A stretch of 64,000 bases of DNA from Styela clava (lineage: Eukaryota), in NCBI RefSeq assembly GCF_964204865.1, contig NC_135260.1, positions 5,518,001-5,582,000 of the forward strand. Direction: 5' to 3'. The first letter of the stretch is position 1, and every line of letters starts with the position of its first letter. The notes under the pieces were generated by a model, which had not been told where the DNA came from, did no database searches, and saw only the letters and a list, made by a program, of their open reading frames with translations. The translations under genes were made by a program, and so were the position numbers. Below are positions 7,505 through 61,765 of this stretch, one piece after another.

Positions 7505-9184
7505 CTTTACCAATCTCCCAGGTTGTAGGAAAGGCAGACAATACTTTGGCATGTGAATAAATTCTTCCATTTGACCAGCTAGTTTTCCCAACTGTTGTCG
7601 AATCTTGTAATAATTCATCGCCACGTCTTCATCTGATATCTTGATTTCATCATATTCCTTTTCCAGGTTCTTGACCTCTGTGAGATTTGAGGATGAAGAT
7701 TGTAAAAATTACTGTCTGAACAAAACTCTAAACTGAGTAAAGATAATACGAGATAGCGATCGGAGACCGCCGACTTATCGATCTAGCGGCGTGTATCCCG
7801 ACTCAATAGCGACACCATGTGTCCCATCACTAATTAATTGATAACTCGATAATTATACGACATAATTCATTCAAAATCAAAAGGCAATCAAAATTTTGGT
7901 CCTAGATATGATGAATACACATGCAAAATTTGGAGCAGATTCAACCTCGCTTTCGTGAGATATCGCGTAACATAGGTAAGTGTCTAACAGACAGACAAAC
8001 AAGCAAATACCTTACCGATCAAGATCGATAAGTAACAACTAAGCTATCATAACCGGGTCCCACATTTCAAATGACTTGGTACAAAGGATGTAAAATAAGC
8101 CACTTCTTGCCATTGTCATGATTGGTTACATAAGCAGTTGGTTAAGACTTCCTCCACTTCCTAAGTCAATGCATGTGGTAGTGTTAACTGGTTAACTATT
8201 CCCATACCCGACTTGAATCCTAATTAGAGACTGTGGTTTGCCATATGATTATCTTTATCAAACTTGTCTTCCCCCAGAGATAAATATCCTTGTTTGTTTT
8301 CTTCCAAGTCTATTACTTTTAACCACTTGTTTTTTATTTTATTTAAAGAAATGAAAAAAATGAAAAAAAAAATGAATTACTCATGAGAAGAATAAATTTA
8401 TTCAATTTATTGAAATTATTCACTTACTGTCCATTATTTCAGGGACTGCCTTGTAATGTTGAAATTGATAAAATGATTTTTCCAGCATGTATTCAGGGTT
8501 GATTTCTTCAACACGAAGAAGGTTCAGTACCATGTTGTATGTGAGACGGAATGCCGAATTCAATGGATCAGGAGAACCCTGAAACCAAACGGTTAAGTAT
8601 TAGTGAAATTCAAAGACATAAACTTATTAACAAAAGAGCTAACAAGTAGGGGGAGTAAGGTTTGATTGAGTCTTTTATAGAGTGGAATATTTTCAAAGTC
8701 CACCGAACATACATCCAACATTACATCCTGAGGAGATCCTCAACTGGTCCACGCTGGATTGAAATCAATATTATTAAGAACAGAAACAAAGTGAGGTAAT
8801 GTGAAAAATTCTCCAACCTTGTAAAACACTCAAAAAATGCAGTATTTTGAAAACAACTCATTTATCATAATATAGTACAAATCTCAGTTGCGGTAGCTAT
8901 TTTGTTAGTTTTCAATCAGTTTTACTTGTCAAGAATGAAAGGTAGCCATTATACATATTCATTAACCGAACCCGAAAAACTCAAAGTAGCTTTCAAATTC
9001 TAAAGTTCGGGAATCTACCCCTTTTATTTAAATTTTTTTAACAAGAATTGCTTCCAACCTTCAATAAATTCTTTCCGACGCTTGGAGACATTTTTTCATC
9101 GACCATAATAATGACAATTCCTCTGTCATCCATTCCTCTTCTACCAGCTCTCCCACTCATCTGAATGTATTCTCCACCAGTGAT
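7505..9184 (-). CDS. MTREX: Three consecutive internal exons of exosome RNA helicase MTR4 (MTREX/SKIV2L2)
   Basis: Minus-strand exons 9184-9059 ([42 protein letters not shown], helicase motif VI), 8578-8428 ([50 protein letters not shown]) and 7677-7505 ([57 protein letters not shown]). Canonical splice sites, in frame, no stops, recognisably MTR4. Not in the ORF track. Confidence 0.93.
7745..8033. mobile_element. DINE-1/HINE-like non-autonomous element in an MTREX intron
   Basis: Subterminal inverted repeat ACTTATCGATC / GATCGATAAGT and a short ACAG/ACAA microsatellite near the right end. The classification is inference. Confidence 0.45.
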
Positions 9185-9976
9185 CTGAATAAATGGAAGA
9201 ATAAATAAATATAAATCACAGTCACAAAAATGGCCGATTAATTTAAATTCAATTTAATAAATTTATCATGACAGCTTTTTATAACTCTACTTCAAACCAG
9301 GCTCTGAAGCAGTTGTTCTCCTCTAATGGAGTTATCTCCAAATATTATAGCGTGAATTGGTCATTAAATAGCAACAAGAAAACAATTAATTTTAATTACA
9401 CATTAAGCTCTCATCAACTAATTTAGCTGATAAGTGAAAAGCTGATAAACCAATTCTGGACGACATCTTACCCAATCATAAATTTCAACAAGAGACTAAT
9501 TGAGATCATTATGCAACAACTTTTAATCAAAATATAGCTGATAAAGAGATATTGAATTGATAAAACCAATATTTTATTGGCAGGTTATGAATAAGGTATC
9601 AGTTACGCAAATGTTTAGCCCAAAGTACGCCATAACAAACTTAAAGATTTCAATTTCCATTTGTAATTAATTAGCATTGAGAAATCATCTTAAGAAATTA
9701 TGATACAGAAGTCCATCCAAGCATGTGATGCCTTTGACAATAACAAAGAGTAATAAGGAAGCGTACTGGGATCTAAGGTGTAACTGGCACTCATTCATTT
9801 ATTTATGGGGTGAACAAAAACTTAAACCATTGAGATTTGACCAGTACAAGATTATGGTTAGTTGAGCTATTCAATAAGTTATCTGAATATAGAGTTTGGG
9901 TATTTATTTGTTAATTGTATTTTTTGTTTCAAGTTTCAAACAATTAGTGGGATAATACAAATTATAAATTAGAGCC

Positions 9977-12900
9977 ATGCTAAAATATATCATCAACGTC
10001 ATAATTCTGCTATTTATAGGTAAGTATGTTTAATGCTTCTTGAAAGAAACCATATTAAACTATTAATAGATAAATATATCCAATTAAATCTTAAATACTA
10101 TTCAATGCATAATAAATCATTTTTTTTTAATTGAATATGTGTTTTTATCAGTAGGCAACTAATAAATGTATTCAATTTCTTTTATAAATTTAAATTGTCT
10201 CAATGGAATATAATGTGAATTAAAATTTATGCCAGATGTATTTGTAGTACAAATGTTGAGTCTTTTATTCATATTTGAGTACCATATAAATTCATATTAT
10301 TATGAAAATAGAAAGAATAGCTGGCTGAATTTCAGATGATATGTGTTTATTGTAGTGATATTGGGTGTGATGTAATGATTCATTAGATATTGGGTACAAA
10401 ACTGCAAATTTTCTTTTAAAATAACTTCTGTAAATATTATTATTTATTTGATTTACGTATTATTTTATCGTCTTTTATGCTGATTATGTAGTCGAAATAA
10501 ACTTATATTTTTACTTATTTTCCTATAGCAGATATGATCAGTATGAATGAAGCAGCATTATGCACTGATTGCCCAAATCCAATACTTGGAACAGAGAGCG
10601 AAAATATCACGTATGGTTCAGGTAATGAATACAACTGCGAATGTGATTGGACAATACCAACAAGCTTTGAAAATGATGACAATTATGCACTTGTGCTTTT
10701 GCTACAGAATGAATCTCTGTCTTATACAAATGCGAACATTCAGGGTTGCTCTGGAGCTATAAGATTTCCAAGTACATGTGAGAAAAATAATTTATCAACT
10801 TTTTTACAATATTTATTAGTTTCTTGTGATACTTTTAAATGTTGCATAATTGAGGGGTTTATTATTGCGTTTACTCCATATTTGAGAAGACACAAACCTT
10901 CTCAAGGGAGGCAATCGGTTAAGTTTTAATACTCAGTAAATCAGTCAATGCTGGTCTTTTCAATGCAGAGCAGCAGTATTGATCATTGTAAATGATAATA
11001 GTCTGTCTAGTGTCTATGTGACAAATTTTTATAATAATAATTAATATTTATTTTCTCTGTGTGAAGATTTTCCTTAAAAAATTTTATAAATAATAATGTG
11101 TGTGAGCCGAAAATATCTCCTCAAACATTTTTACGTTTAGAAAACGCTAAATCCAAAATCCAAACAATTTCTAATCACACGTTTTCAACCAAGCACAAAG
11201 CATTTGTTTGGGAAATTGTAATGTCCTCACAGATCAGATAAGATCAGATCAGATCAGTTTGTTAATTGAAATATATTATAAATTATTACAGACTTGAATG
11301 GATATGTATGCGACTACCAGCAAAAGCACTGTACTGTGATAACAACTCATTCAACTAGTTGCGGCATCAACAAAATAAAATCACAAATACCAGATAAGAA
11401 CCATAAATGTGATTCCATCATTCATTGGAGAAATATATCCAGAAGTTCATACAAATTGCAATACAGATCAAATAACCTGTTTGGTTACACGAAATATTTC
11501 AGAATCCAATACCTTCCTATCAGCTGTGAGCAAACCACAACAGCAGTGGTGTCAGCACAAATTAGCAGTAAGAATATTTCTTGGTACTCTCATAGTATGT
11601 GTTAACAGGTTAGGATTGGGCCATAATTTTATTACGATTTCTTTATTTTAGTTCTATTACGAGTTCGAGGACTGTCCGTGTTAGCCAAGTGAATACATCT
11701 CTGCCCATAGGTTTCAGTCCCTTTGCAAAACTTGATGTAAAGTAGGCAAACAAAATTAGTTACCTCCATATTGGTACACATATACTTCTGGAGCACCTAT
11801 TTCTTTATGTTTTCAAATTTAGAAGAGTTAATGGCCTAGAAATTGTTGGCATCACAGATGACACATCTCTGGTTGAAATACCATGGCCAGCACCTCACCC
11901 AGGATAAAATGAATTGGGCAAGTAATGCCAAACCAGAAGAATTCCAGTCTTTCAAGAAATGGTCTCTTTACATGACACAATTTAAATTTTAGGATAGGAT
12001 TTACATATTTATCTCGGGGTATGGGTTTAGTTAGTCAGTTATTCAATTCAGATGATGGATTTGATGGAGGAAGCCAGCTGTTACGTGAACTACCCTACAA
12101 GAGTACAGCAAACCTCTTGCCAATATTATTCCCCATGGAAGATAATCAGAGGTGCGGTGGCGAGTGTATTCGCAATGCTTAGCATAATGTACCACACCGC
12201 TGAGTCGTTTCATTGCACTGCCTTGAATACTACCATAGAAATGGTGATTTACAAGCCATACATTATGTCTATTATTTTCACATTAAAATGGTTCGACTTC
12301 AACACTCCAAACAAGGCGAACACCAATATTTAAAAATATTGCTAAAGAGCTGGTATTTTTGGAAAGAGGTCTTGAATGCAATTAGTGCAAAATTTTTTTA
12401 ATTTTATCATTTTTTTACCGTAAGCATAAAATTTTACATTTTATCTCCAGCTACTCAAAACCCAACAACAAGACCAGGAGTTACAGATCCAATTTACGAA
12501 AGCAACACAGCAAGTAATTCATACTATTATTTTACACAATATTTAAAAATGATATTTAGAAATGATATTTAAAATTCCTGGTCAGCTGGGGCCGATACAA
12601 AAGCTGTTAATCCCATAAAATTTTAAAATGTCCGGCCAATAATAAAAGCAACAAAACGACCGAGAGAGAACAAAAGTATCTTAGAATATCATACAAATTT
12701 TCTGTTTGCACTTGGCATCAAAATATTATGTTTTTCGACTGTCCTAATATATTGAACTTCAAAAGTATACGAGTTATGTACAAAGTGGATATTACCATAT
12801 TATTAATGCTATGAAAGAAATATCCTGACTTTCCATTGATTCAGAACATTTATGTTCATTTATGTTTGAGTCAAAAAAACTACAAGGAAAACATGGCAAC

Positions 12901-14171
12901 ATATTCACAAAGCCAAGTATTACTATAATGAGCAATTGATATAATATAGTGACAATGCCTAATTTGTGCATTATATGGTGTCCACGAAGACTCAATTTTT
13001 TAAAATTGCAAAGGGATTTATCGATACCATATGTTGTTTTGGCCCTCACAGATATGAAGTGAAAATACTTGATAATACAATTACTGTTTTAAAAACAACA
13101 AACCTAGTTAAGATATATTGAGAACTGACTTCATAAAAAATTGAAATTATAAAGGGACTTCATGGACATCATGTATATTCAATTCTGCAATTCTATTCAT
13201 TTGTGAATAAAAAAACATCATATATTCATAATAATAAATTTCAGAATCAAATACCACTACAGTGAAATCACATGAATGTTCTCAAGAAAATGTGAATGCA
13301 GCCATTGCAGCAGTGATAGGAATAATTGGAGGCTTTGCTATTGGGATTGCATTTTCATACATTCTGAAGAGGTTAGGAAATTAAAAACTTATAGCTTGAA
13401 AATTAAGTTTCACTTGCAAAATAGGGGCTGTATATTGAACTGGAGGTCATTTCTTCTTGTCTATTTCCTACTTTGGATTAGTATGTGTCAGTTGCCATGA
13501 GCTGCAAAGTACCCAGGGCGAGTGGGGTTTGCGGTTTGGTCCGCCCTTTTGAAATGTAAAAAATTCTATATCATACAGAGCAATTTTTTGTGGCTTGAAA
13601 CACTTTTTAGAACCTCAATACTTGAAAACGAGCCACTAGCTGTTACGGTCTATTAGGCGAATAGAAATTACAGGAACCCACCCCTTTAAAATTCCCGACT
13701 ATGCATTTGGCCACTAAGATGCTTGAATGGGATTGAATATAAAGACAAATAGCATAATCTATTTCCACAAAATAGAAAAGTATATTTGTGATGTTTCGTT
13801 AGATCACAGTCTAACCTTTTTCAGACAAAACAAAATATAACTGTCTATAATATTACAATCATTGTCAATTAAGTTAATATAACAAACTCTGAAAAATCTT
13901 TTCACCTTTCTACTAAACTAGTCCAAAACAAAGACTTTGAAAGTAATATTTTTTTTGTCTATGAAGATACCAAACCAAAAAGAAGATTACAAAGAAAACA
14001 GGACAAAAAGGAACACCAGAAGCACGTGGAGCAGCTGTGGAACAGGAAATAACTTTTAACAACCGTGCACCAACAACTGATGACAGTGGATATGAAATTC
14101 CAAATCAAAATAATGGAAAGAATAGTCACCAATACGAGGATATATATGATAGAGAATATGAATATGAATAG
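9977..14171 (+). CDS. Receptor copy RA (divergent): CUB-like type I membrane protein with non-ITIM tyrosine-rich tail, ~318 aa
   Basis: Exons 9977-10019 (signal MLKYIINVIILLFI), 10529-10771, 11292-11567, 12451-12513, 13245-13371 (TM AAIAAVIGIIGGFAIGIAFSYILKR), 13967-14171 (tail ending DDSGYEIPNQNNGKNSHQYEDIYDREYEYE*). GT-AG, phases 1,1,1,1,2 as in the other copies; 957 nt open. Confidence 0.85.
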
Positions 14172-14668
14172 ATCAGGAGTTCACAGATGGTGGGGCCCGC
14201 CCAACGAGAGGAGCGTAGACAATTATTGTGAGGATGTGAAGCTAATAAAAATGAAAATATTTGTCAGATTTGATCTTCCCCGCCTTATTTTGGATATTTA
14301 CATTTTTTTATTGTTTACATTTTCTTATGATGTATACGTATAAACAACGTGTTTTTGTATAAAAAATACTTTCACCCTAATATCTGTAATTTGTAGCCTA
14401 TTGTTAGCTGAATATTTTAGAGGTGGGACACGTGATTTGACAAATTCTTGAAAGATGGAGCGGCTTAAAAAGTTGTTGCATAGATGTTGATATAAAAACA
14501 GACCTGATGAAAGTCGACTCCATTGCTATCTTCACAGCACAGTCACAGCTAACACATATTTATCCTTTTCTTATTTTCCTTGTACTAAAATAAACTTTTG
14601 CAAAATTTTTAACTCTGTCAATTTAGTATGGTGGTTATCTATCAATGGGTTTGATCAGGTATATAGTG

Positions 14669-15027
14669 CAGGGGTGTGCATAGCGAAGCTTGTGGGCCAA
14701 ATGCGGCCCACAGGGAAGTGCCAATTAAAAATGGTGTGTGGCCCGCGAAGCGAGTTTTCAATTTAATTTAATGTCATACGTGCGAGTAATTCAAATCTTT
14801 TCGAGTGACAAAGCCTATACCTGAGTCCAATTTAATATCTATGCATATGACGTCACAATGCTTTAACAACTTGCTTGTGCAAAGCAAATACCGGATATCA
14901 TAGGATCAATTATTGAACTTTTTGTGCTTGCAACGACTAGAAAGCCTATGTTGAATAAGTTGTGGCTCGCGGTTTTCACCCAGTCGTTTGTACCCGGTCT
15001 TCCCGTATAAAAGGTTGCACACCCCTG
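14669..15027. mobile_element. hAT-type MITE
   Basis: Perfect 12-bp TIR CAGGGGTGTGCA / TGCACACCCCTG; flanks ATATAGTG / ATATAATG. Confidence 0.8.
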
Positions 15028-17153: not shown

Positions 17154-18600
17154 TGAAAAAGGGGCACATGGTAACTTCAATCAGTACAAAGAGGAAAAAA
17201 TCTTTACACATGAGATGTATGACCTTGGTGTGACATATGTACCGTTCAAGAAATATCCTGGGCTTTCCATATCTTGGAAGCAATATATTCAATCTGCAAC
17301 AATCATGATTTAACAATCATGAGTATAAATAAGATCAATGATAATGCATAAGAATATTTCATTGCCCTCTGTTAAGCCACAAGGAAATAGCACGTCACAT
17401 GTTATGTAAATTTTGCAATACACCACGTTAGGTGTCGTGAAATAATAATTAATAACCTTTATTGCCATTACAAATCTTGACTCAGAAATTTTTCTCTTCT
17501 TCCGTTAATGTCTGGCCTTTGAGCACAAGATATAATAATTAGTCAAGTAATTTTGTGACCTTTCCAACAGTAACAATGTTACTGTCACCAAACCCATTTC
17601 TGCTACTTGTTGGAAATTACAGACCAAACTTAGAGACAGAGACTAAATAAACTTAAAATAGCATAAAAATTTAATGTTATTTTTTTAATATTTCAACTAA
17701 TTTTAAAATGTTAGATCTAAAAATAAACTTCGCTGTTCAAATGATGTAAAATCTACACAAAAATTCAAACTATATCAGTGCAAACTAACAATACACAAAA
17801 CAGAGAACTATACCCAGATAGCCAGAATGTGTCAAAAATAAATTAACAAAAGTATCACAAGTACAAGCACAAAAAAACAAAAAGGGGGCACTGGGTAACT
17901 TTAATCAGTACAAATCAGGGCGCTCCAGAAATGTATGTACGTTCGCCTACTTTAAATCAATTTGTTTCAAGGGAATGAAACCTATGGGCAGGGGGTATAT
18001 TCACTTGGCTAACACAGACAGTCCCCGAACTTGTAATAGAATTAAAATCAGGACAATCAGAATAAAATTATGGCCTAACCCTAACCTGGTACATATACTA
18101 CGGGAGTACCCAAATCAGTGCAGCAAGGAACAAAATCTGATTATCAGAACATAAAATTATGAATTATTGACCAATCACCATTGCACGGTTTACATTTGGC
18201 AATTCTCAAGAATTCAATTTGTGGATTCAGCAACAATTATGATTTGATACTATAATAAGCAGAAGATCAATGGCATTGCATAAGACTCCATAATTGGTCT
18301 CTGTTAAGAGATAAGGAAATAGCACGTCACATGTTATATGAATTTTGCAATACACCATGTTGGCAATGGTAGGATAATAATGACCTTTATTGCCATGACA
18401 AGACATGACTAAATAAATGTCAGATCTTCGAGCACAGGTAACAACAATTAGTCAAATTATTTTGTGACCTTTTCAACAGAAATGATGTTGCAACCACAAA
18501 TCCATTTCTGCTACTTGTTAACAATGAAGTTTAAACTAAATTGCAAAAAAAGCATAAAATTCAATAACATTATACTATTTTTACTATTTCAAATACTATG
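17154..18600. repeat. Diverged tandem duplication of non-coding sequence
   Basis: ~17154-17700 matches ~17877-18600, e.g. AAGGAAATAGCACGTCACATGTTAT at 17381 and 18313. The second unit is interrupted by the MITE at 17918-18111. Confidence 0.7.
17918..18111 (-). mobile_element. ~200 bp MITE-like family with internal GGTTAGGGTTAGG; representative copy
   Basis: Imperfect ~24 bp terminal inverted repeats (GGGTACTCCCGTAGTATATGTACC vs GGGCGCTCCAGAAGTGTGTGTACC consensus). Copies at ~24-222, ~5373-5510, ~11583-11797, ~15452-15656, ~20260-20478, ~39645-39785, ~50851-51015, ~59975-60184, ~62272-62459. Confidence 0.75.
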
Positions 18601-24700: not shown

Positions 24701-25832
24701 GTTTTGAAGGTTAATTTGTGGGATATTGTTTCAATTCTACCTATACCTTCATCTGAATTCCAAATTTTGGAACTTATGAAAATTTTTTTAGCATCCACCC
24801 TGTTTTAATTTTAAAAGGAAATTCCACCAGTCAGATTTCATCAACAAGTGCTAAGAACCAAGAGCAAATTTTCACTCCAACAACAATCATCATCATTGCT
24901 GCTTCTGTATCAGGACTGCTCATTATACTCATATCCGGAATACTGATTAAAAGGTAAAGTGAGATTTTTTGATTAAACCATGATTTGAAATGAATCTCAT
25001 ATTACAGAATAAACTTTAGTATAGGGTAGTTACATTGAAAACATTATAATCAATATGTTAAGAATATGTATAATGAGTAGCATTATGAGAAAAATAACCT
25101 GATCTTTTATATGTTGCATAGTGCTTGAAGCTTGAAATGAAAATTTAAAAATGCTGTTATACTACATTCTGGAAACAAAAGGATATCACTAATATGGGGT
25201 ATATTTTTTAAGTTTTTGGAAGGCTACCAGCACTCGACTTAAGAGTTACAAAATTATTATTATGCAACATTTTCCCATCTTTGTTGCAGAAGTAATTTTA
25301 TACAGCGTTTTTGTGACTGTTGCTCTAAGCAAGGCTCTATAAAATCAGTCAATGATTTGTGAGTAAATACTATATTTTGAAAACACTGGAATCTTTCGAT
25401 TCGCCATCGGCCATCGCCTTTCTGAATTCTCACATCCTGGATGTTTGTACATTTTTTTGAAAGATTTAGCCACAGAGATTGCTTTTTTACAACAGATACT
25501 GCAGAAGTGACGACAAAAAGGTTTCCAAAACCATGGAGCAAGAAAATGGACTTGAAGAAAGATCTGAGAAAGAAATCGTTGAGAACGCCATCTACGGAAC
25601 ATCACTCAATGATCAACAAGGACCAGAAACAATCATCAATCAAATATACGACACAACTCCAGATACTAATGACGAAACAACAAAGACAGATGATCCATGT
25701 TTATATGCAGTCGTTCAGAAGAAAGAAAAAACAGAAGACAAGAATGTGGTGACTGAGGGTAACGATGACATTGTCACCATTGAAGATGAATCATCAAGCA
25801 TATATGCAGTGGTGAACAAAGATAAGAAATAA
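21732..25832 (+). CDS. Receptor copy R1: CUB-like ectodomain, S/T stalk, TM, ITIM-bearing tail, ~387 aa
   Basis: Exons 21732-21783, 22181-22429, 23371-23631, 24251-24379, 24818-24953, 25496-25832. GT-AG, 1164 nt open. Tail motifs NAIY, NQIY, CLYAVV, SIYAVV. Confidence 0.88.
22518..22970. mobile_element. hAT-type MITE in R1 intron 2
   Basis: Ends CAGGGTGGTCCAA / TTGGACCCCCCTG; perfect 8-bp TSD GCTTAGTT at 22510-22517 and 22971-22978. Confidence 0.88.
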
Positions 25833-44500: not shown

Positions 44501-45092
44501 TACTATAAAATGGAATTAAAGTCCTCATCTCCAATCTGGGAAAGAAATGCTGTCACTAAGATTTTAATTAGCTATATTTTAAAGTTTTCAGAAGGTTACC
44601 AGCACTTGCCTGAAAGCAATTAAAACCACTCAAAAATAGAAGTGACAGTATTTTTATATGTGAAGTTACAAAATTATTTTTATATGGCGTTTTTCACATC
44701 TTTCACTAAACACAAGGCATCAGCCACTGATATGTGTGAGGTTAATATTATTTGGAAGAACTTGGTTCAGCGTTGCTTGTGCAATTTCGTACATCTTGGA
44801 ATGTTTGTACATTTTTTAAAATTTTGAATACTGATGTGTTTTTTAAAACAGATTCTGCCGAAGTGACAATAATAAGATTTCCAAAACCATTGAGCAAGAA
44901 AATGACAAAGTACTTGAAGAAAGATCTGAGAGAGAAATTGTTGAAAATGCCATCTATGGAAGATCACTCAATGATCAACAAGGACCAGAAACAATCATCA
45001 ATGAAATATACGACACAACTCCAGATACTAATGACGAAACAACAAAGACAGATGATCCATGTTTATATGCAGTCGTTCAGAAGAAGGAATAA
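41536..45092 (+). CDS. Receptor copy R5 with premature stop removing the distal ITIM, ~355 aa
   Basis: Exons 41536-41587, 41969-42211, 42862-43125, 43785-43919, 44110-44242, 44852-45092. TAA at 45090-45092 where paralogues have AAA. Ancestral stop at 45192-45194. Confidence 0.85.
42386..42737 (+). mobile_element. tRNA-derived SINE in R5 intron 2
   Basis: Reverse complement of the 2467-2796 family, ending ...TAAATCCTATTCTATCC. Confidence 0.82.
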
Positions 45093-46049
45093 CCAGAAGT
45101 CAAAAATGTGGTGACTGAGGGTAACAATGACATTGTCACCATTGAAGATGAACCATCAAGCATATATGCAGTGGTGAATAAAGATAAGAAATAATATACT
45201 GTGCTTTATATAAAGAGGAATTTGACTTTTTTAACTTATTTATATAACTTTTGTGGCTATATTCATCGGCTCTTTCATGAGCATGACAGCCTAGTGACTG
45301 GTGTTCAGGCTTATAAAGTTGAATATCTGAGAATAAGTTTGGTTAGGTTGATGAATATCAACCAACTAATTTATTCAAGTACTAATCGCTTTGAAGAATG
45401 CCGATAAAGAGTGATTTTCGTATGAATAACCTTTAAAGAGAGCAATCATAAAAAAATGTTTTGTGAAACAATGATGCTATACGAGAAATTTTGCACTTAG
45501 TCTCATATGGAAGAGCTATACAAAGTAAAGGTTACATTATTAATATTCACAAATTGATGTTTGATTGTTCAATTTAGACTGACTTTTCTTTTTACATATT
45601 ATCATTTCTAATTTTTGATTACTTTGCAGTGGATACTAATAAATGTTGAACGGTGTCATTCACTTGAAATACAAATAAAGTTAAAAAAGTGCACTAGCAG
45701 CATACATGCTCGGTATAAGTTGATATAACAGATTTCCTATAAATGATATATCATTTAAAACTTTCCAATCATCTCCTGTGTGTTGCAATAACCTTTTCAG
45801 GATATACAGGTTGTGACTAAATTTTTCGCCCACATTTAAAGAAAAACTCATGCACAATCATTTGCATATTCTAATAGACTTTTATGACGTATGCAGCATT
45901 TGGCAGAATCATTAAAAGCACAGGTAAGGCTTCAACATTTCATTTTGGTAACCTACTTTGAGAGGTGAAGCTACTTAGATAACAAAGCAACCAATACAGC
46001 TTCGAAGTTGAAATACCACAAAGGAATTTTCAAGTTGTTTAAAACAAAA

Positions 46050-51643: not shown

Positions 51644-54600
51644 ATGAAATTAAAAACATGTTCTATGGATAAAAATGGAATCCTGTGGTGGATTTCAATT
51701 ATATGTAAGTATTTTTTCAACTTCTAAAATATCTGAATATTTTTTGTGTGAGTTTTTTTTTTAGAATCCTTCATATCAAGTTTTTACAAGGCTCGATTGC
51801 ATAGCAATTTTGGTTCTGTTAACATCATTTGAGAAAAATGAAGAAGAAAAAAATGATTACTAGAAACACCATAGTTGAAAAATTTATTTAACTTAAGCAA
51901 TAACAATTGCAACGATTACCCTATTTAGTGAAAAAAAAAAATACCCAATTTATATGCATATTTAACGATGATAAAATACATAACAAGATTGAAAATTGTG
52001 CATTGAATGATTTCATCCATATGATAATGCAATTTTAACAGCACTCAGCATCAGCCTGAATGAAGCAGGACGATGCACTGATTGTACAAATACAATACTC
52101 GGAACAAAGAGCGAAAATATCACATTTTATGGACCAACTAATGACTTCAACTGTGAATGTGAATGGACAATACCAACAAGTATGAAGACAGATCATAAAA
52201 CTGCAATTGTTTTGATGTTACAAAATGTTTCATTGCCATTGACAACGAGTAGCAGTACAGACTGCTCTGCAAGTATCAGATTCCCAGGTATTACACTATC
52301 AACAGTTTTTACTCAATCTTCTACTATGAATAAAAAAAACTTTATAACACTTGAATCAGGGGCGGCCACTTTTCATAATTGGGGGGGGGGTTAATCCAGA
52401 ACCTAGGCCTCTTTGCTTGGACATGGAACTCATGTGTCACAAAACCGATCCCTTGAATTCCGCAAGAATTGGACCACCACCCTGCTAACAGACAGAAACA
52501 ATAAATTTGAGTCATATTTGAGTATTGTTTCAACTTTTAGTTTTGCATAAAGCGCACCACCACCAAAATTTTACCAAGGAAATATCATTTAACCAGTAGA
52601 ATTGCCATCATTGCCAATTTATTTAATCATAATAAAGCAACATGCAGGATTCTCGCAATGACAACTTTACAGGGTTTTTATTTATTATTTAATACGAAAA
52701 TATTCGGTGTCAGAAATAATATTGTTAATTTAAAATTGGGACCTTTAATTTATCAACGGTGACGATGAAGAACACAGACGGCCCCAAACGATAAAAATCG
52801 GAATAAAACCCTCAAGCTGTCTGTCTTTAACATATGTTGCCGATATGATTGCCTAGTTCTCCCGGGAATATAAAAACAAACCTTGCGTGAGAATTGAACC
52901 TTGTGAAAAAAAGACGAGCAGAAATGTAGCTCACGAACATTAAAATGTCTAGCGTTCGGGATGCCTGTTGTATATATATTAAAAATACCTGATATTCCAA
53001 AATTCGTTAAAAATATTAGAATTATTCGATTCTATAAAATTATTTCATTTTGACCACCCTTGCAATCTGTAATCACGCAACCTGGAGAAACACGTGGTAG
53101 TCCAAACACTGATGCAATGAAACTTAGTAAAACCTTCATTAAATTTAGTAATTTGCACTACTCCACGAAAGCGTGGTGGAACTGACAATTATTTCCTATC
53201 TCGAACACAAAACGGTTATCTTTTTAGGATAGTCTCAGGGGTTTGAAAAGTCGAATAAGTGTTTTAACATAGTAAATTGTATGATCTTTGCCATAAAATT
53301 ATGCTCGAGCCTTGCACGAAATTCATAATGTGAAAAGATATGATCAGCGGTGAAAATTGTTTATAACAACTTTAAACCTATTTAGGGCAAAACCGAAGCA
53401 CAATAATGTGAGGTGGTCCGAATGTGATATCGAGTACGTTATTCTAAGAATACAGTTATATTATTGCTAACTATTAACTATTTGTTCGCGCTCGACTGTC
53501 GCATTTTTCGGAAATGATAATTTTAATTTTGTAAGGCGGAAACAACATGTGTTTAAATATAGACGAACTTTTTATTTTGAATAAAAAACAGCATGCGAAA
53601 CATGGAAGATGTAAAAGCAAACAAAAACATCTTCTACAAATTTCCCATTTCCATGACTTTAATAATTATTTGTCAAAAAATTTCGCAGCAATAAAAACAA
53701 AAATATATTTTAAAACATTTTTGCAAAACTATGAGATTACTATTAACATATACCAGTACTCAAAACAAGAATATGCCAATTTCTGGTACTGCTGATTTTA
53801 CCTGTAATCACAACAAAATATTAAAGAGATCATCTTTTGTAGGCGCTGATGGGGCAGAATGTGAATTTCCAATAAACTACTGTCTTACATTTGCAACTGC
53901 ATCAACTATATGCAACATCAACAAAATCAGAGAAAAAATTTCAGTTGCAAATCACACCTGTGATTCAATCATGCCATGGAATAAAGCTGGAGGAAGCCCA
54001 TACAAGATACAATACTTTGCAGGAAACTATGCTGATCACACAAAATACTTCACAATACAATATCTTGTAATCGATTGTAGACCTCAAACAACTACACCAG
54101 AAGAAGGTGAGAAAAAGCAATTAAAGATTATATTAAAAAATTAAATGTTCTGAATGAAAATATATTTTTGTTAACCAATACTATTCGTACATCTGCCACA
54201 ATCAGTGGTAATGTTTAAAATTATATCCAAGTAATGATCACTATCCCAATCAAAACATATTTGTGGAATTGACAAAAAAGTATGGTACATATTTGGGGGG
54301 AGATAATCAATAAAATTGCCTCAATCAATAAAAGATCATGACCAATAATATTTTAATATAAGCATATTTTCTTTTAAATACCTTTGGTTTCCTAAAACTT
54401 CAAATAAGACATACCAGTATGAATATTCTGTACAAATATTTCCATATTTTGGTTCAACCTCTAAAATATTACAAAACGAAACTTCTTAGAGACGACAGCA
54501 TATACAGAAATCATATCTGACAATAACACAACAATGATAAAACAATCAATATCTACAGAGATAACCGGAAGTACAACCCAGATTGTCTCCAAGAATCCTG

Positions 54601-55243
54601 CCGCTACTGGAGAGAACATTACAGGTATATAGGTGTGATCAATTTGCTTTCTCACAAATTTCCATTGAATGCAGCAAACCATAACTTGAATAATTAACTA
54701 TTAGGAGTTATTTTCATGGGACGCATATGCATTCCTCCAAATAAGTCCTTTTATAAACACTCACTGATATCCATCATCCAATATTACGTAAGGATATACT
54801 ATTAATATGGAAGGAGCGAAATCTTTCCGATTCAGCATTACTAACCCGATTTATTACACCCTGGGTGAGATGGGGGGGGGGGGGGGGGGGGCAAGGATTT
54901 GAATCCTCGATGTAACATCTGCAATACCAACACAATTAAGTCTAACACTTTTACCTGTGGGCCATCATGCCACTATTTTTGAAACATCGGGGGGACTACA
55001 CATAGGTCAACTGAAACTACCCACGAAGAAAATTATATACTCGATATAACAGGTATAACATGTTACCCTTGTTAAGCCTTCTGTAATTTATCTAATATTT
55101 ACACAGTAGTTGCAACCAGACCTATAGAAGCAACAAGTGTTCCTCAAGTCCAAGCCATAAATTCCACAGCAGTCATCATAATAGCTGCCTCCGTGGCAGG
55201 ATTGATCACTATAGTGATATCTGTTCTACTTATAAGAAGGTAA
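51644..55243 (+). CDS. Receptor copy R7 lacking the cytoplasmic-tail exon (~280 aa if read through to the intronic stop)
   Basis: Exons 51644-51704, 52042-52287, 53843-54106, 54490-54624, 55107-55239. No exon 6: the R8 promoter motif starts at ~55465. Read-through gives AGA AGG TAA (55241-55243). Confidence 0.78.
54872..54891 (+). repeat. Poly-G run (20 nt) inside a degenerate interspersed repeat
   Basis: Seen directly. Flanks resemble 545-615 (TTTATTACA.CCTGGGTGAG...). Confidence 0.7.
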
Positions 55244-55640
55244 AGGGATAAACTTATATACTGGTATATAATAAGACAAGTTAAAATTTAGTCTAATAAT
55301 AATGAGATCTATGTTACTATAAAAATTCCAATTTTTGTGGTCTATCCATAATATACAAAAGTTATGAATTTTCAATAGAGTGGAAAAATATGTTTGTACA
55401 CAAATTAGAGATATTGCCATATGTATTAGGTTAGATGAATTTAAAGTTGTGTATGACTATATTTCGCCCACTATTTCAAATAACATGATATCGACTACAA
55501 AAACAAATGTGTCGGAAAGTAGCATTTCAGTCTTTGATTCTGCAAGAGATTGATAGCACAAGAACAAACCTACAGTAGTTCACCTGGCAAATTAGAATTA
55601 GAATTCATTGCTATATGGAAGAAATTTTTTATGAGGGACA

Positions 55641-58600
55641 ATGAGAAAGAAAAAAGATTTCCTAAATAAATATCAAATTATTCTCGGGATACTGATATTA
55701 TGTGAGTATTTTATTATCTGGGCATATTCTGGATATGTTTGTATATTTATGTTTCTATATTTAATTTGATGAATGACTGAAACCCAATATTTCATTTTAA
55801 ATTTTTATAGCAATCAGCCTTAGTCTGAATGGAGCCCAAATATGCACCAAATGTCCCAGTGTAATACTTGGAACAGAGAATGAGAATATAACATACGGAC
55901 CAAGTAATGAACTCAACTGCCAATGTGATTGGACAATACCAACAAGTATGGACACAGATCATGAAACTGCAGTTGTTCTGCTGTTGCAAAATGTTTCACT
56001 GCCAATGACAACGGATGGAATTACAGACTGCTCTGGAGAAATCAGATTTCCAAGTGAGCCGATTTGGTCCAATTCATAAATACTGTTTAAGCTACCAGCA
56101 GTGATCGGTAGAATTGTAAAAATCTAAACTATTTGTTTTCAAACTGGAGTCCGCGGTCGCTTAGGGGTCCGCGAAGCGATTTTAGAGGGACCACAAGACA
56201 ACTTGAACCGTGGCACAAAAGCACTTTAATCTGAAGTAGGCTACATCAACTATTGATTTCATTCTTGGTGAACATATTTGAATCAGTGAATTTTGTTAAT
56301 TTGGCCCTGCAAGGAAACGATATCACCGTACTCCAATGTCATGAAAAATTAACTGCCTTCAAAATGAAGCTAACATAATGGCGATCTGAGTTAGAAATCA
56401 GTAACTTTGGCCAATTTCCAGATCGAAATTCATTTATCGATTAAAATGAACTTGACATAAGAGAAGAAAGTTATCGTTGCTTACCTACCGTACCTTACCA
56501 GATTTTGAAAAATATTATCGATTCTTCAATAACCTGTTTGGAATCACTGTTAGCGATCTACCTTCGGAAGACAGTTTAATTCAAGAACAGTTTATCGATC
56601 TTGTGAGCAGGGATGGCCATTTCCGAATACTAAACTATTCCGAATACATTCTTAAATAATGTTTTCGAATCTGGAATTCCGAATACATTCTAAAATCGAA
56701 AATAACACATTTTTGTTTTAGTTTATTAAAAACCAGTAAATTAGGAAATAAGCTTTAATAGAAATATCAGAATAAAGCCACAAACCAACAATATATGTAC
56801 ACAAAGTAATTGATAGTTTATAGCTATCAATAAAAAATAATAGCAGCTTGTGACACAGTCAGTTTATTAAAATTACTTACTTTGTACAAATGACCATATG
56901 AAAAGATAGCCATTGAGGAGTTGTTTGACGCTTTCTATCATTGGTACCATGATATTACGATAATAGTCAAGTCTATTGACAAAAATACTACTTGTATTCA
57001 GATAATTGTGTATATTTTCTGAAAGTAATAAAATTTATTGGCAATACAGGCAACTGAAACAAGCAACAACAATCGAAAATCCATTATTCCTTTAAAAAAT
57101 TCTAATATTAAAGCCTAGAGTATTCTACTACCTACCAGTATATTTTTATATTAATTTATTAGAACCATATTGTAATTATGTGTAACATATTGTTGTGTTT
57201 GAAATTAGAAATGAATTAGTAGAGGATAGATGACCACCACTGCCAGCCGCGCAGCCAGGATTTTCGAAATCGGAAATTCCCATTGCCGCCTGTAACAACC
57301 ACCACGATTACGCGCTCGTTAAAAGAGTCGTCTTTTCAGCGTATAATGATCATCCTGTTACGTAAAATATTCAATCCATGACAACTACGAGATTTTAAAA
57401 TATCTTTACATATTAATTTAATGCGTCCAACGTAACTCGCGGTTGCTTCTTCTTACGTCAAAAAAACATTACTATTCGGTCCACGGCGATCTGTGACCTA
57501 AAAGTATGAGATAAACTGCCTGATGTATTTAATTTTAATACGTATTTTTGCAATCTTGCCAATTCGTTATCGCCGTTAGAATAATCTCAAATAATGATAT
57601 AAAATCCTGTTAAGTGTAGAGTATAATTCATTTCATACAAGGAATATACATATAAAGTTTAGCAGTAAATAAAAAATACATATTCATCGCCGCGATTATG
57701 CCACCTGTTAGAAGCGTCGACTTTTACAACAAATAATATAACAACGAATATATATTTTTCTGTTGTGCAAAGTGATGAATTCGTGACCAATTGTCTTCAA
57801 TTTAACCTGCGGTTGCGTCGACAAAATAAAATCCTCACCACTCTTATATACCATTGCAATTCGTGGTCATAAAAATAAAAACGTGTGGTAAACCAGCCGA
57901 TTAAATAATGTTTTGATCCGTATTTTGCGAATTCGGCAAATAATTAGATGTACTTGTTAGAAAAAACTGTTCAAAAAATCCATGAATCTGCTGTAACATC
58001 TCAGAGTAAAATTTATTTCATAACAATAAAATTGATTGAATATACTTTAGATTAATTATATTATATACATCCTCACAACCCGGGCGTTTCGAACCATGTA
58101 TCATGTTAACACGAAAATATTCGACGGCAATTTAAAGTAATGGATAACCAGGCAAATCCCGCTCTCAATTTGTGACGATAGGTTTCTAAACGTCGACCAA
58201 ACCAAATTTTGCGATTTTCACTGCCTAGAAAAGTGTTATTTAAACTTTCGTGGGCCTCAATAAAACTTATATTGTTTACGGTTTTATTTTTAGTATTTTA
58301 AATTGCCACTTCTCAATCAAAAAGTTGCGTTGTCTTTAGAAACTCACCGCCGATGAACGTATTTTACCAGATTCACAATTCCGTGCGCGTACAAAAATAA
58401 AATAATTGTCATCATTATCGTGTAACAAATTTGTGGGAAATTTTCGTTTTAGAGAAATTAACACAAACGTAAAGGCGTTTACGGCCTAAATAACACGTTA
58501 CGCTGATGAGTGATGAAAACAATCACGCGCAAGTTTTTATCAAGAATGTTTTCATTCAACGGAAACGTCTTGAAAGCGACTTCGAAAATGTGTGACGTCA

Positions 58601-61600: not shown

Positions 61601-61765
61601 GGATCTCAAGATATAGAAGAAAATGCAGCAATTGACGAACCATGCGTGTATGCAGTAATTCAGAAAAAAGATTCCCCACAGAATGAAATGAAAGCTGGCA
61701 CTGTAATCATCGAAGATGATGAACCTTCAAGCCTTTATGCAGTCGTGCATAAAGACAAAAAGTAA
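55641..61765 (+). CDS. Receptor copy R8, ITIM- and NPxY-bearing, ~381 aa
   Basis: Exons 55641-55701, 55811-56053, 59511-59774, 60334-60408, 60924-61098, 61438-61765. GT-AG, 1146 nt open. Tail motifs DNPLY, NGIY, CVYAVI, SLYAVV. Confidence 0.87.
56130..59031 (+). mobile_element. Decayed Buster/Charlie-type hAT transposon with transposase C-terminal remnant, split by a younger insertion
   Basis: Right end AAGTTTGAGAACCACTG, degenerate left end, flanks ATCTAAAC / GTCTAATC with central TA. 58750-58954 encodes, with frameshifts, WIEMAYPDVAKMALK...CEWEAAFSTLLAIKTKCRNSMAVRHDMRVALSKTEPEVVKLVEAKKAHPSH*, the Buster-family C-terminal dimerisation signature. Confidence 0.78.
56608..58696. mobile_element. 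2.1 kb non-autonomous hAT element nested in the Buster remnant
   Basis: TIR CAGGGATGGCCA / TGACCATCCCTG, subterminal CGAATA repeats at both ends, perfect 8-bp TSD CTTGTGAG at 56600-56607 and 58697-58704. No long ORF. Confidence 0.9.
60491..60814. mobile_element. Pogo/Tigger-like MITE in R8 intron 4
   Basis: Imperfect inverted ends TACCGTAATTTACGG / GCGTAAATACGGTG. Confidence 0.5.

What the first reader, a model, noticed from the sequence alone, without database searches (positions are those of the whole stretch)
13245..14171. Divergent copy RA has a glycine-zipper TM and a different tyrosine tail: putative activating partner
Seen: RA keeps all 10 ectodomain Cys and the intron phases. Its TM is AAIAAVIGIIGGFAIGIAF (GxxxGxxxG). 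Its tail has no YAVV and instead carries five Tyr in the last 26 residues: DDSGYEIP-x10-YEDIYDREYEYE. Known: GxxxG promotes TM dimerisation, DEDGYxxL is the Dectin-1/CLEC-2 hemITAM, pYEEI is the Src SH2 optimum, and YxxP binds Nck/Crk/Abl SH2 domains. Inference: an activating or adaptor-recruiting member beside the inhibitory ones. The ITAM match is imperfect because the first Tyr has P at +3.
Basis: partly seen in the sequence, partly recalled or inferred. Interest (0 to 1): 0.8.

Follow-up and report, generated by a model that had tools for sequence, protein, structure and literature searches.

The report
Divergent sea-squirt CUB-like receptor with tyrosine tail
RA is a real, spliced, apparently unannotated gene of the sea squirt Styela clava, but its glycine-rich membrane anchor and tyrosine-rich tail are a divergent copy of the commonest tail type in a roughly 40-gene receptor family, so it is not a unique activating partner and its signalling direction is untested.

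Summary
RA (window 9977-14171, + strand, six GT-AG exons, 320 codons) encodes the TM AAIAAVIGIIGGFAIGIAF and a tail ending DDSGYEIP-x10-YEDIYDREYEYE. RNA-derived contigs show four of its five splice joints, including both joints of the TM exon on one contig.

The genome is Styela clava. RA is the first gene of a roughly 260-kb array of about 40 receptors with a CUB-like ectodomain. The family uses two tail modules. Type a is a dual YxVV tail with an Ile-rich TM: 9 exons, 7 in this window. Type b is a Gly-rich TM with a YENY / n x SGYEVP / QQYEVI / EYQYDN tail, at about 25 loci.

RA's tail exon is a collinear, divergent type-b tail (best E 3e-7) that keeps three Tyr motifs. RA has the most divergent ectodomain of the array, so other type-b genes are better counterparts of the YAVV genes. 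RA has no canonical ITAM, hemITAM or ITIM. The best reading is a dimer-prone phosphotyrosine docking receptor of unknown polarity. The last four Tyr were not seen in RNA. This scan had already found the family on neighbouring DNA.

The parts
9977..10019 (+). RA exon 1: ATG and the hydrophobic signal peptide (MLKYIINVIILLFI...). The intron after it is phase 1.
   Evidence: Sequence. The joint to exon 2 is seen in RNA contigs of runs X2 and X3.
10529..10777 (+). RA exon 2: first half of the CUB-like ectodomain, with 5 Cys. A tandem NAGNAG acceptor lets the exon start at 10529 or 10532.
   Evidence: Identity to paralogues is 54-67%.
11292..11567 (+). RA exon 3: second half of the CUB-like ectodomain, with 5 Cys.
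   Evidence: The joint 10777 to 11292 lies on a 511-nt contig of run X1. Alignment A1. Long branch in the tree.
12451..12513 (+). RA exon 4: short Thr/Pro-rich stalk.
   Evidence: The donor at 12513 is joined to 13245 in run X3. The acceptor at 12451 is inferred from the frame and the pyrimidine tract.
13245..13371 (+). RA exon 5: juxtamembrane segment, the transmembrane helix, and the KR stop-transfer residues.
   Evidence: Both flanking joints lie on one contig of run X3. Translation.
13277..13279 (+). The 11th, unpaired extracellular Cys, 7 residues before the TM. It is a candidate for an interchain disulfide.
   Evidence: Type-b paralogues also have membrane-proximal Cys, and the type-a proteins inspected have none.
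13298..13354 (+). TM core AAIAAVIGIIGGFAIGIAF, with the pattern A-x3-G-x3-G-x3-G.
   Evidence: The allelic differences seen in RNA (N228K, I250F and two silent changes) leave every Gly unchanged.
13967..14171 (+). RA exon 6: cytoplasmic tail of 67 codons plus the stop. It is a divergent type-b tail.
   Evidence: In the own genome it has 29 further matches at E <= 10. Nine full-length ones lie between 3.3e-7 and 1.5e-4 at 36-41% identity. The alignment is collinear.
14079..14102 (+). DDSGYEIP, a YxxP motif after an acidic-Ser-Gly lead. It is equivalent to the SDESGYEVP unit of type-b tails.
   Evidence: The motif is present in RNA contigs of runs X11 and X2 up to 14109.
14133..14144 (+). YEDI, a YxxI motif close to the Src-type pYEEI optimum. 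It is equivalent to QQYEV(I/V) in type-b tails and to PYEEI in P0003 and P0042.
   Evidence: It was not covered by any laid RNA contig.
14145..14171 (+). YDREYEYE and the stop. The C-terminal E-Y-x-Y-(D/E) is equivalent to KEYQY(D/E)N in type-b tails.
   Evidence: It was not covered by any laid RNA contig.
14244..14249 (+). AATAAA polyadenylation-type signal, 73 nt after the stop.
   Evidence: Sequence only.

Best explanation
RA is an intact, transcribed and apparently unannotated gene. It is the first and most divergent member of a Styela clava-restricted tandem family of about 40 type I receptors. Family members have a signal peptide, one CUB-like domain with 10 Cys, a Thr-rich stalk, one TM and a Tyr-motif tail.

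RA's last two exons are not a new invention. The tail exon is a divergent copy of the family's majority 'type-b' module. That module combines a Gly-rich TM, membrane-proximal Cys, and a tail built as D(D/E)SGYE(I/V)P, then 10 residues, then QYExI, then 3-4 residues, then EYxY(D/E).

Inferred mechanism. The A/G-x3-G-x3-G face of the TM and the unpaired juxtamembrane Cys favour a (possibly disulfide-linked) dimer. After ligand-driven clustering, a Src-family kinase phosphorylates the conserved tail Tyr. The phosphotyrosines then dock SH2 proteins: the Src family on YE(D/V/E)I, and Crk/Nck/Abl/Vav-type domains on YE(I/V)P. On this reading the receptor acts as its own scaffold and is neither a Syk-ITAM receptor nor an SHP-recruiting ITIM receptor. 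Unlike most type-b tails, RA has lost the Grb2-type YENY site, where it reads TFNN.

What is shown: the gene structure, the splicing, family membership, the conserved motifs, and the absence of an ITIM. What is inferred: dimerisation, phosphorylation, the SH2 partners, and a net positive output.
For: - Gene and splicing.
- Organism and family: every strong hit among 1.84 billion representatives and in two word-index searches is a Styela clava 'uncharacterized protein'.
- Family size: 41 exon-3 matches in the own genome, most of them at C14:5.529-5.787 Mb, where RA is the first.
- Tail homology: 29 further tail matches at E <= 10, 17 of them below 0.01. The alignment has no internal gaps and conserves PT(S/T)D(D/E)SGYE(I/V)PNQ, KNxxQYExI and (K/R)EYxY(D/E).
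- The two modules stay separate. Type-b TMs have 2-4 Gly in GxxGxxxG or GxxxGxxxG patterns, while type-a TMs are Ile-rich with 1-2 Gly.
- Ectodomains are shared between the classes: a-versus-b median identity is 73%, the same as within each class.
- Fold: the AF2 ectodomain has pLDDT 75-94, and 20 of the top 24 structural neighbours are CUB domains, with Z 6.4-8.5 over 97-114 aligned residues.
- Constraint on RA: the ORF is intact over 6 exons, all 10 fold Cys and most invariant residues are kept, and no allelic change touches a TM Gly.
- Ascidians express Src, Syk, SHP-1, Vav, Grb2 and Crk homologues (PMC12582321).
- A CUB-containing type I receptor that signals through repeated YxxP sites bound by CRKL after Fyn/Abl phosphorylation already exists: DCBLD1/2 (PMC6029619).
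Against: - No phosphorylation, binding or signalling data exist.
- RA's TM exon has no significant match elsewhere in the genome. Its kinship with type-b TM exons rests on position, Gly spacing and the juxtamembrane Cys only.
- GxxxGxxxG is a weak predictor. Its chance rate is 4.4% given the composition, and small-xxx-small patterns also occur in type-a TMs.
- Two RNA contigs from other individuals diverge from the reference exactly at 14109. The four distal Tyr may therefore be variable or absent in some alleles.
- RA expression is low, with contig depths of 3-7.
- RA sits on a very long branch and shows about 11 codon-changing against 8 silent allelic differences. This also fits relaxed constraint.
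- YExI also fits the YxxPhi endocytic signal.
- No orthologue from another species was found, so conservation is shown among paralogues only.
Confidence: 0.55

Rival explanations
1. RA is the ITAM or hemITAM-type activating partner of the neighbouring YAVV (inhibitory) genes. It sees the same ligand and signals through Syk.
For: RA lies directly upstream of eight dual-YxVV genes. YEIP-x10-YEDI has ITAM-like spacing. DDSGY resembles the acidic lead of DEDGYxxL. Ascidians have Syk (PMC12582321). The distant family member P0010 carries YENL-x6-YENL, which fits the ITAM pattern.
Against: The first Tyr has P at +3 in RA and in nearly all type-b tails, so neither the ITAM nor the hemITAM consensus is met. 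RA's ectodomain is the least similar to the YAVV genes, whereas about 25 other type-b genes share up to 82% identity with type-a ectodomains. The inhibitory status of the YAVV tails is unproven, because the Botryllus dual core-2 tail goes with an activating receptor.
Confidence: 0.12
2. The tail is mainly a trafficking device. YEDI or YEVI (YxxPhi) and the acidic C-terminus would drive AP-2-dependent endocytosis of a CUB-type scavenger or uptake receptor, with no phosphotyrosine signalling.
For: YE(D/V)I fits YxxPhi. This is established knowledge of AP-2 mu2 signals and was not tested here. Some CUB receptors, such as cubilin, are endocytic, and cubilin is among the fold matches. The tails are short.
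Against: Repeating the SGYEVP unit 1-6 times and keeping YxN and YxxP sites is typical of SH2 docking and is not needed for sorting. The existence of a second tail class with ITIM-like motifs on the same ectodomain points to signalling.
Confidence: 0.15
3. RA is a copy drifting under relaxed constraint at the edge of a birth-and-death array. It is still transcribed, but it has no specific role and its odd tail is simply decay of a type-b tail.
For: RA has a long branch of 2.17 against a median of 0.14 and many codon-changing allelic differences. Contig depth is low. It is absent from the protein collections searched, so it is probably not in the RefSeq models. It has lost the YENY site. There may be a structural variant at 14109. 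Broken relatives exist in the array.
Against: All 320 codons are open across six exons with canonical splice sites. All 10 fold Cys and three Tyr motifs are retained despite about 60% tail divergence. Correct splicing is seen in at least 3 samples from 2 studies.
Confidence: 0.12

Closest known systems
Botryllus schlosseri fester co-receptors (FcoR), PMC12582321
   Same: Both come from a styelid ascidian. Both are large, polymorphic, tandem families of type I receptors whose tails carry ITIM, hemITAM or other 'core' Tyr motifs. The paired C-terminal xVYxxV motifs of FcoR, 29-33 residues apart, match the layout of the type-a tails next to RA, where the two Tyr are 33 residues apart.
   Different: The FcoR ectodomain is Ig-Sushi-Ig-Ig, not CUB-like. 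RA's motif set (YxxP, YExI, EYxY) is not described there.
Vertebrate paired immune receptors (KIR, LILR/PIR, SIRP, and CEACAM1 with CEACAM3)
   Same: They form tandem clusters in which near-identical ectodomains are joined to alternative signalling ends. The family-level a-versus-b ectodomain identity here is 73%. As in CEACAM3, the non-ITIM member carries its own Tyr motifs and has no charged TM residue for DAP12 or FcRgamma. This comparison is from general knowledge.
   Different: Those ectodomains are IgSF, not CUB-like, and they use canonical ITAM or ITAM-like motifs. RA itself is not a close ectodomain twin of any ITIM-like member.
DCBLD1 and DCBLD2 (ESDN), PMC6029619
   Same: They are type I 'scaffolding receptors' with a CUB domain outside the cell and several YxxP motifs inside. 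The YxxP sites bind the CRKL SH2 domain after Fyn/Abl phosphorylation.
   Different: DCBLD proteins also have LCCL and discoidin domains and long tails, and they are single-copy genes. No sequence homology was detected (Pfam gave nothing).
hemITAM receptors (CLEC-2, Dectin-1)
   Same: An acidic-x-Gly lead sits before a single signalling Tyr: DDSGY here against DEDGY there.
   Different: They are type II C-type lectins, and the motif requires L at +3. RA and the type-b tails have P at +3.
CUB domain (Pfam PF00431; C1r/C1s, MASP, neuropilin, TSG-6)
   Same: The jelly-roll fold is the same. The predicted ectodomain of paralogue P0038 aligns to these domains at Z 7.4-8.5, rmsd about 3 A, over about 105 residues.
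   Different: There is no Pfam match at sequence level. The domain has 10 Cys instead of 4 and about 40 extra residues.

Membership tests
ITAM | Two YxxL/I half-sites separated by 6-12 residues | tested here: not met
   RA reads YEIP-x10-YEDI. The first half-site has P at +3, in RA and in the type-b consensus YEVP.
hemITAM | [E/D][E/D][E/D]xYxxL, as defined in PMC12582321 citing Bauer and Steinle | tested here: not met
   RA reads D-D-S-G-Y-E-I-P. It has two acidic residues plus Ser, and P instead of L at +3.
ITIM | (S/I/V/L)xYxx(I/V/L) | tested here: not met
   None of RA's six tail Tyr fits: KRYQTK, SGYEIP, HQYEDI, DIYDRE, REYEYE and YEYE-stop.
Glycine-zipper / GxxxG TM dimerisation motif | (G/A/S)xxxGxxxG on one helix face | tested here: met
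   RA has A-x3-G-x3-G-x3-G within AAIAAVIGIIGGFAIGIAF. The chance rate given the composition is 4.4%, or 1.2% with the leading small residue.
Glycine-zipper / GxxxG TM dimerisation motif | The helix actually self-associates | not testable with these tools
   This needs TOXCAT, BiFC or cross-linking.
Styela clava CUB-like receptor family, type-b tail class | A tail exon homologous to the YENY / SGYEVP / QQYEVI / EYQYDN tails | tested here: met
   Nine full-length matches in the own genome have E from 3.3e-7 to 1.5e-4. The alignment is gap-free and collinear. RA lacks the YENY site.
Styela clava CUB-like receptor family, type-b tail class | An ectodomain with the family's 10 invariant Cys and core residues | tested here: met
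   Alignments A1 and A2. The profile matches RA's exon 3 at 3.4e-42 (at C14:5529297).
CUB domain | Sequence match to Pfam CUB | tested here: not met
   There was no Pfam hit, either for RA's exons or for full-length paralogues.
CUB domain | CUB jelly-roll fold | tested here: met
   This was tested on paralogue P0038, not on RA itself. Twenty of the top 24 structural neighbours are CUB domains at Z 6.4-8.5, and Foldseek gives probabilities of 0.85-0.97 with weak E-values.
Paired (activating/inhibitory) receptor pair, RA versus R1-R8 | Partners share a near-identical ectodomain | tested here: not met
   RA is 54-67% (exon 2) and 40-51% (exon 3) identical to the others. Other a/b pairs have a median of 73% and reach 82%.
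Paired (activating/inhibitory) receptor pair, RA versus R1-R8 | The two tails give opposite signalling outputs | not testable with these tools
   This needs reporter or phosphatase/kinase recruitment assays.

The most novel reading that the evidence does not exclude
The type-b tails, RA's included, are receptor-built-in scaffolds. They would do the job of LAT and SLP-76, which ascidians lack (PMC12582321). YxN would recruit Grb2 or Gads, repeated YE(V/I)P would recruit Vav, Nck or Crk, and YExI would recruit Src kinases. Together with the dual-YxVV type-a genes they would form a CUB-based, non-Ig paired recognition system for microbes or for self/non-self in a solitary ascidian. RA would be an old, separately specialised lineage of that system.
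Probability: 0.15. Interest if true: 0.75.

Novelty: new variant of a known kind. Interest (0 to 1): 0.45.

Why it matters
Multigene receptor families with alternative tyrosine-motif tails underlie innate self/non-self and pathogen recognition in vertebrates. They have only just been shown in the colonial ascidian Botryllus, where they are built on Ig domains. A second ascidian system built on a CUB-like fold would show the same design arising on an unrelated scaffold. Its tails are not classical ITAMs but look like adaptor scaffolds. RA is useful as a natural divergent variant: it keeps three Tyr motifs and the Gly-rich TM, and it has lost the Grb2-type site. On its own it is one more member of the family and not a key regulator.

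Tried and rejected
It fell. I repeated the local tblastn by translating window coordinates inside the script instead of typing letters.
- The exons were searched separately. Inside scripts the exons were concatenated only to check frame and length and to place allelic differences in codons. The fold was therefore obtained from database paralogue P0038, not from RA.
- Pfam on single RA exons and on full-length paralogues gave nothing above threshold.
- The RA tail exon against the 5.8-billion protein index found no candidate. Against PDB sequences it gave nothing.
- The RA TM exon against the own genome matched only itself.
- The type-b tail region against the protein index found only the S. 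clava family.
- No further family exon lies between RA and R1 apart from a weak fragment at 17551-17607. This rules out an alternative type-a tail exon for RA.
- Splicing at 14109 was rejected as the cause of the contig break, because there is no GT or AT-AC donor there. A close paralogue as the source was also rejected, because the next-best tail is only 41% identical.
- The MTREX-like exons at 7505-9184 were not sent to any search.

Full report
**Observation**

Exon 13245-13371 translates to SNTTTVKSHECSQENVNAAIAAVIGIIGGFAIGIAFSYILK. Exon 13967-14171 translates to YQTKKK...APTTDDSGYEIPNQNNGKNSHQYEDIYDREYEYE followed by a stop.

The TM core carries A-x3-G-x3-G-x3-G. Shuffling its own 19 residues produces GxxxGxxxG in 4.4% of trials, and 1.2% when the leading small residue is also required. 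The pattern is real but statistically modest.

Five of the last 26 residues are Tyr, against 6% Tyr in family ectodomains. There is no YAVV.

**Gene model and transcription**

RA has six exons on the + strand:
- exon 1, 9977-10019
- exon 2, 10529 or 10532 to 10777
- exon 3, 11292-11567
- exon 4, 12451-12513
- exon 5, 13245-13371
- exon 6, 13967-14171

All introns are GT-AG. They interrupt the codon after its 1st, 1st, 1st, 1st and 2nd base. The gene has 320 codons plus a stop, and an AATAAA lies 73 nt downstream of the stop.

Contigs from four public runs of the same species (two studies) were laid on 9700-14700. They remove introns at the predicted GT..AG borders, so they derive from RNA. The joints seen were:
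- 10019 to 10529 and 10019 to 10532 (a NAGNAG acceptor; runs X3 and X2)
- 10777 to 11292 (run X1, with 244 nt on each side)
- 12513 to 13245 and 13371 to 13967, both on one 193-nt contig of run X3

Only the joint 11567 to 12451 was not displayed, and it is inferred from the frame.

One open problem remains. Contigs from runs X11 and X2 match 13965 or 14050 up to 14109 and then continue for 106-137 nt with unlike sequence. Nothing was laid on 14110-14171. There is no splice donor at that point and no close paralogue that could explain it. The likeliest cause is a structural allele right after YEIPNQ. The four distal Tyr are thus unconfirmed in RNA.

**Organism and family**

I built a profile of the nine exon-3 peptides of the window and searched it against 1.84 billion representatives. 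The strong hits were 10 proteins. The six I looked up by accession are Styela clava 'uncharacterized protein LOC...'. The others carry that same name in the word-index search with P0007, which returned 35 proteins, all from S. clava.

RA itself is not among these hits, although it would have scored at about 1e-40. It is therefore apparently not in the current protein models.

In the own genome the profile finds 41 exon-3 copies. About 35 of them lie at C14:5.529-5.787 Mb. The others lie at 6.16-6.19 Mb, at 19.05 Mb, and on C13. RA, at 5.529 Mb, is the first gene of the array.

An AlphaFold model of paralogue P0038 has a confident ectodomain (pLDDT 75-94). Twenty of its top 24 structural neighbours are CUB domains, at Z 6.4-8.5, rmsd about 3 A and about 105 aligned residues. 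Foldseek agrees, with weak E-values. Pfam sees nothing. The ectodomain is therefore a very divergent CUB-like domain with 10 Cys.

**Two tail modules**

The family proteins fall into two classes.

Type a:
- The TM is Ile-rich with 1-2 Gly, for example TTIIIIAASALGLLIILIS.
- The tail ends in two YxVV motifs whose Tyr are 33 residues apart: CLYAVV ... SIYAVV, or ALYSVV ... CVYAVV.
- Nine such tail exons exist, seven of them in this window.

Type b:
- The TM is SLIIAIPVSGIVGLIIGALL (GxxGxxxG), or a longer G-x3-G-x3-G-x3-G pattern in P0003 and P0042.
- Membrane-proximal Cys are present.
- The tail reads ...TYENYTPTSDESGYEVPNQVDNKNEQ (the last 15-residue unit repeated 1-6 times) QYEV(I/V)xxGKEYQY(D/E)N.

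RA's tail exon finds 29 further places in the genome at E <= 10, and 17 of them score below 0.01. Nine full-length matches score between 3.3e-7 and 1.5e-4 at 36-41% identity. All lie next to family ectodomain exons. The alignment is collinear with no internal gaps. It conserves PT(S/T)D(D/E)SGYE(I/V)PNQ, KNxxQYExI and (K/R)EYxY(D/E).

RA is therefore a divergent type-b gene. It differs from the consensus in four ways:
- It lacks the YENY site, reading TFNN instead.
- It has an extra Tyr, in IYDRE.
- It lacks the juxtamembrane RYC Cys.
- Its stalk is short and sits on a separate exon.

RA's TM exon has no significant match elsewhere in the genome. Its relation to type-b TM exons rests on position, Gly spacing and the Cys 7 residues before the helix.

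**Is RA the partner of the YAVV genes?**

Ectodomain identity between type-a and type-b proteins has a median of 73% and a maximum of 82%. This is as high as within each class, at 71% and 75%. The classes also interleave in the exon-3 tree. That is the hallmark of paired receptor families.

RA, however, is only 54-67% (exon 2) and 40-51% (exon 3) identical to any other member. It sits on a branch of 2.17 substitutions per site against a median of 0.14. The roughly 25 conventional type-b genes are much better counterparts of R1-R8. RA is more likely a separately specialised, or relaxed, lineage.

Allelic differences in the RNA contigs are frequent: about 11 codon-changing and 8 silent. They leave all Cys and all TM Gly intact.

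**Function**

None of RA's Tyr fits the ITIM, ITAM or hemITAM patterns (see the membership tests). The conserved sites match known SH2 preferences: pYxxP for Crk, Nck and Abl, and pYE(E/D)I for the Src family. This comes from established peptide-library knowledge and was not tested here.

A precedent exists for a CUB-bearing type I 'scaffolding receptor' that uses repeated YxxP sites bound by CRKL after Fyn/Abl phosphorylation: DCBLD1/2 (PMC6029619).

In the related ascidian Botryllus, the FcoR family carries ITIM, hemITAM and 'core' Tyr motifs, and ascidians express Src, Syk, SHP-1, Vav, Grb2 and Crk but lack LAT and SLP-76 (PMC12582321). That paper also describes paired xVYxxV motifs 29-33 residues apart at the C-terminus (core-2). 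The FcoR carrying them is coupled to the activating receptor uncle fester. The type-a tails here have the same layout, so calling them inhibitory is not safe.

My best reading (0.55) is that RA is a functional, dimer-prone receptor that docks SH2 proteins on phosphotyrosines. I put a net activating output at about one in three. The rivals are a Syk-ITAM partner, an endocytic signal, and a drifting copy.

**Relation to earlier notes of this scan**

Other windows of the same contig were already described as a roughly 260-kb array of about 35-40 CUB-like tyrosine-tail receptor genes seen only in S. clava (s1-825756, s1-809842). The 19.05-Mb copies, which are my P0009 and P0010, were described as lying in an ASCC3 intron (s1-809843). 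I reached the same picture independently before reading them (then). Further CUB-like two-tail clusters are noted on other chromosomes (s1-819791, s1-819782). I did not test those.

**Verdict**

RA is a new, divergent member of a recently noticed, unnamed family, which is itself a new variant (a CUB-like fold with scaffold-type tails) of the paired-receptor design. Interest is moderate.

Noticed in passing
window 14109-14110: RNA-derived contigs from two samples (runs X11 and X2) match RA's tail exon up to 14109, just after YEIPNQ, and then run on for 106-137 nt of unlike sequence. This may be a structural allele, either a change in repeat-unit number or an insertion, in the Tyr-rich end.
   Followed up: partly
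window 10524-10532: A NAGNAG tandem acceptor (tatag|cag|) is used both ways in RNA contigs. It adds or removes one codon (Ala) at the end of the signal peptide.
   Followed up: yes
window 52050-61765: The RefSeq model LOC120347104 (P0026, 624 aa) runs from R7's TM exon straight into R8's exon 2 and ends with R8's tail. A read-through or fused R7-R8 product is therefore already modelled. This bears on note s1-816041.
   Followed up: partly
window 44838-45191: The type-a tail exon of the fifth YAVV-type copy has in-frame stops. The RefSeq protein P0044 ends at ...LYAVVQKKE, so it keeps the first YAVV and loses the second.
   Followed up: partly
window 10368-10534, 11537-12204, 12873-13206, 14209-14375: Intronic and 3' segments of RA reach word depths of hundreds to 40,000 in the RNA runs. 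They are high-copy, transcribed repeats, probably transposable elements. One of them sits inside the extra intron that splits RA's stalk from its TM exon.
   Followed up: no
window 7505-9184 (minus strand): There are exons of an MTR4/MTREX-like RNA helicase just upstream of RA. I read them by eye only and deliberately sent them to no search tool (see note s1-816042).
   Followed up: no
L010 (G000:C14:5656873-5660028), and proteins P0025, P0027, P0007: The 15-residue unit (S/N)GYEVPxxVDNKNEQ is present in 1 to 6 tandem copies in different type-b tails. This is copy-number evolution of a YxxP docking site.
   Followed up: partly
type-a tails in the window, e.g. 25470-25832: The two YxVV Tyr are exactly 33 residues apart at the C-terminus in both type-a subtypes. 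This is the same layout as the 'dual core-2' motif of Botryllus FcoR (PMC12582321).
   Followed up: partly
P0010 (G000:C14, about 19.05 Mb): A distant family member ends in YENL-x6-YENL, which fits the canonical ITAM pattern. It also has further YEN sites.
   Followed up: no
window 17551-17607: A short open frame resembles the stalk of R7 (E 0.001). It may be a relic exon between RA and R1.
   Followed up: no
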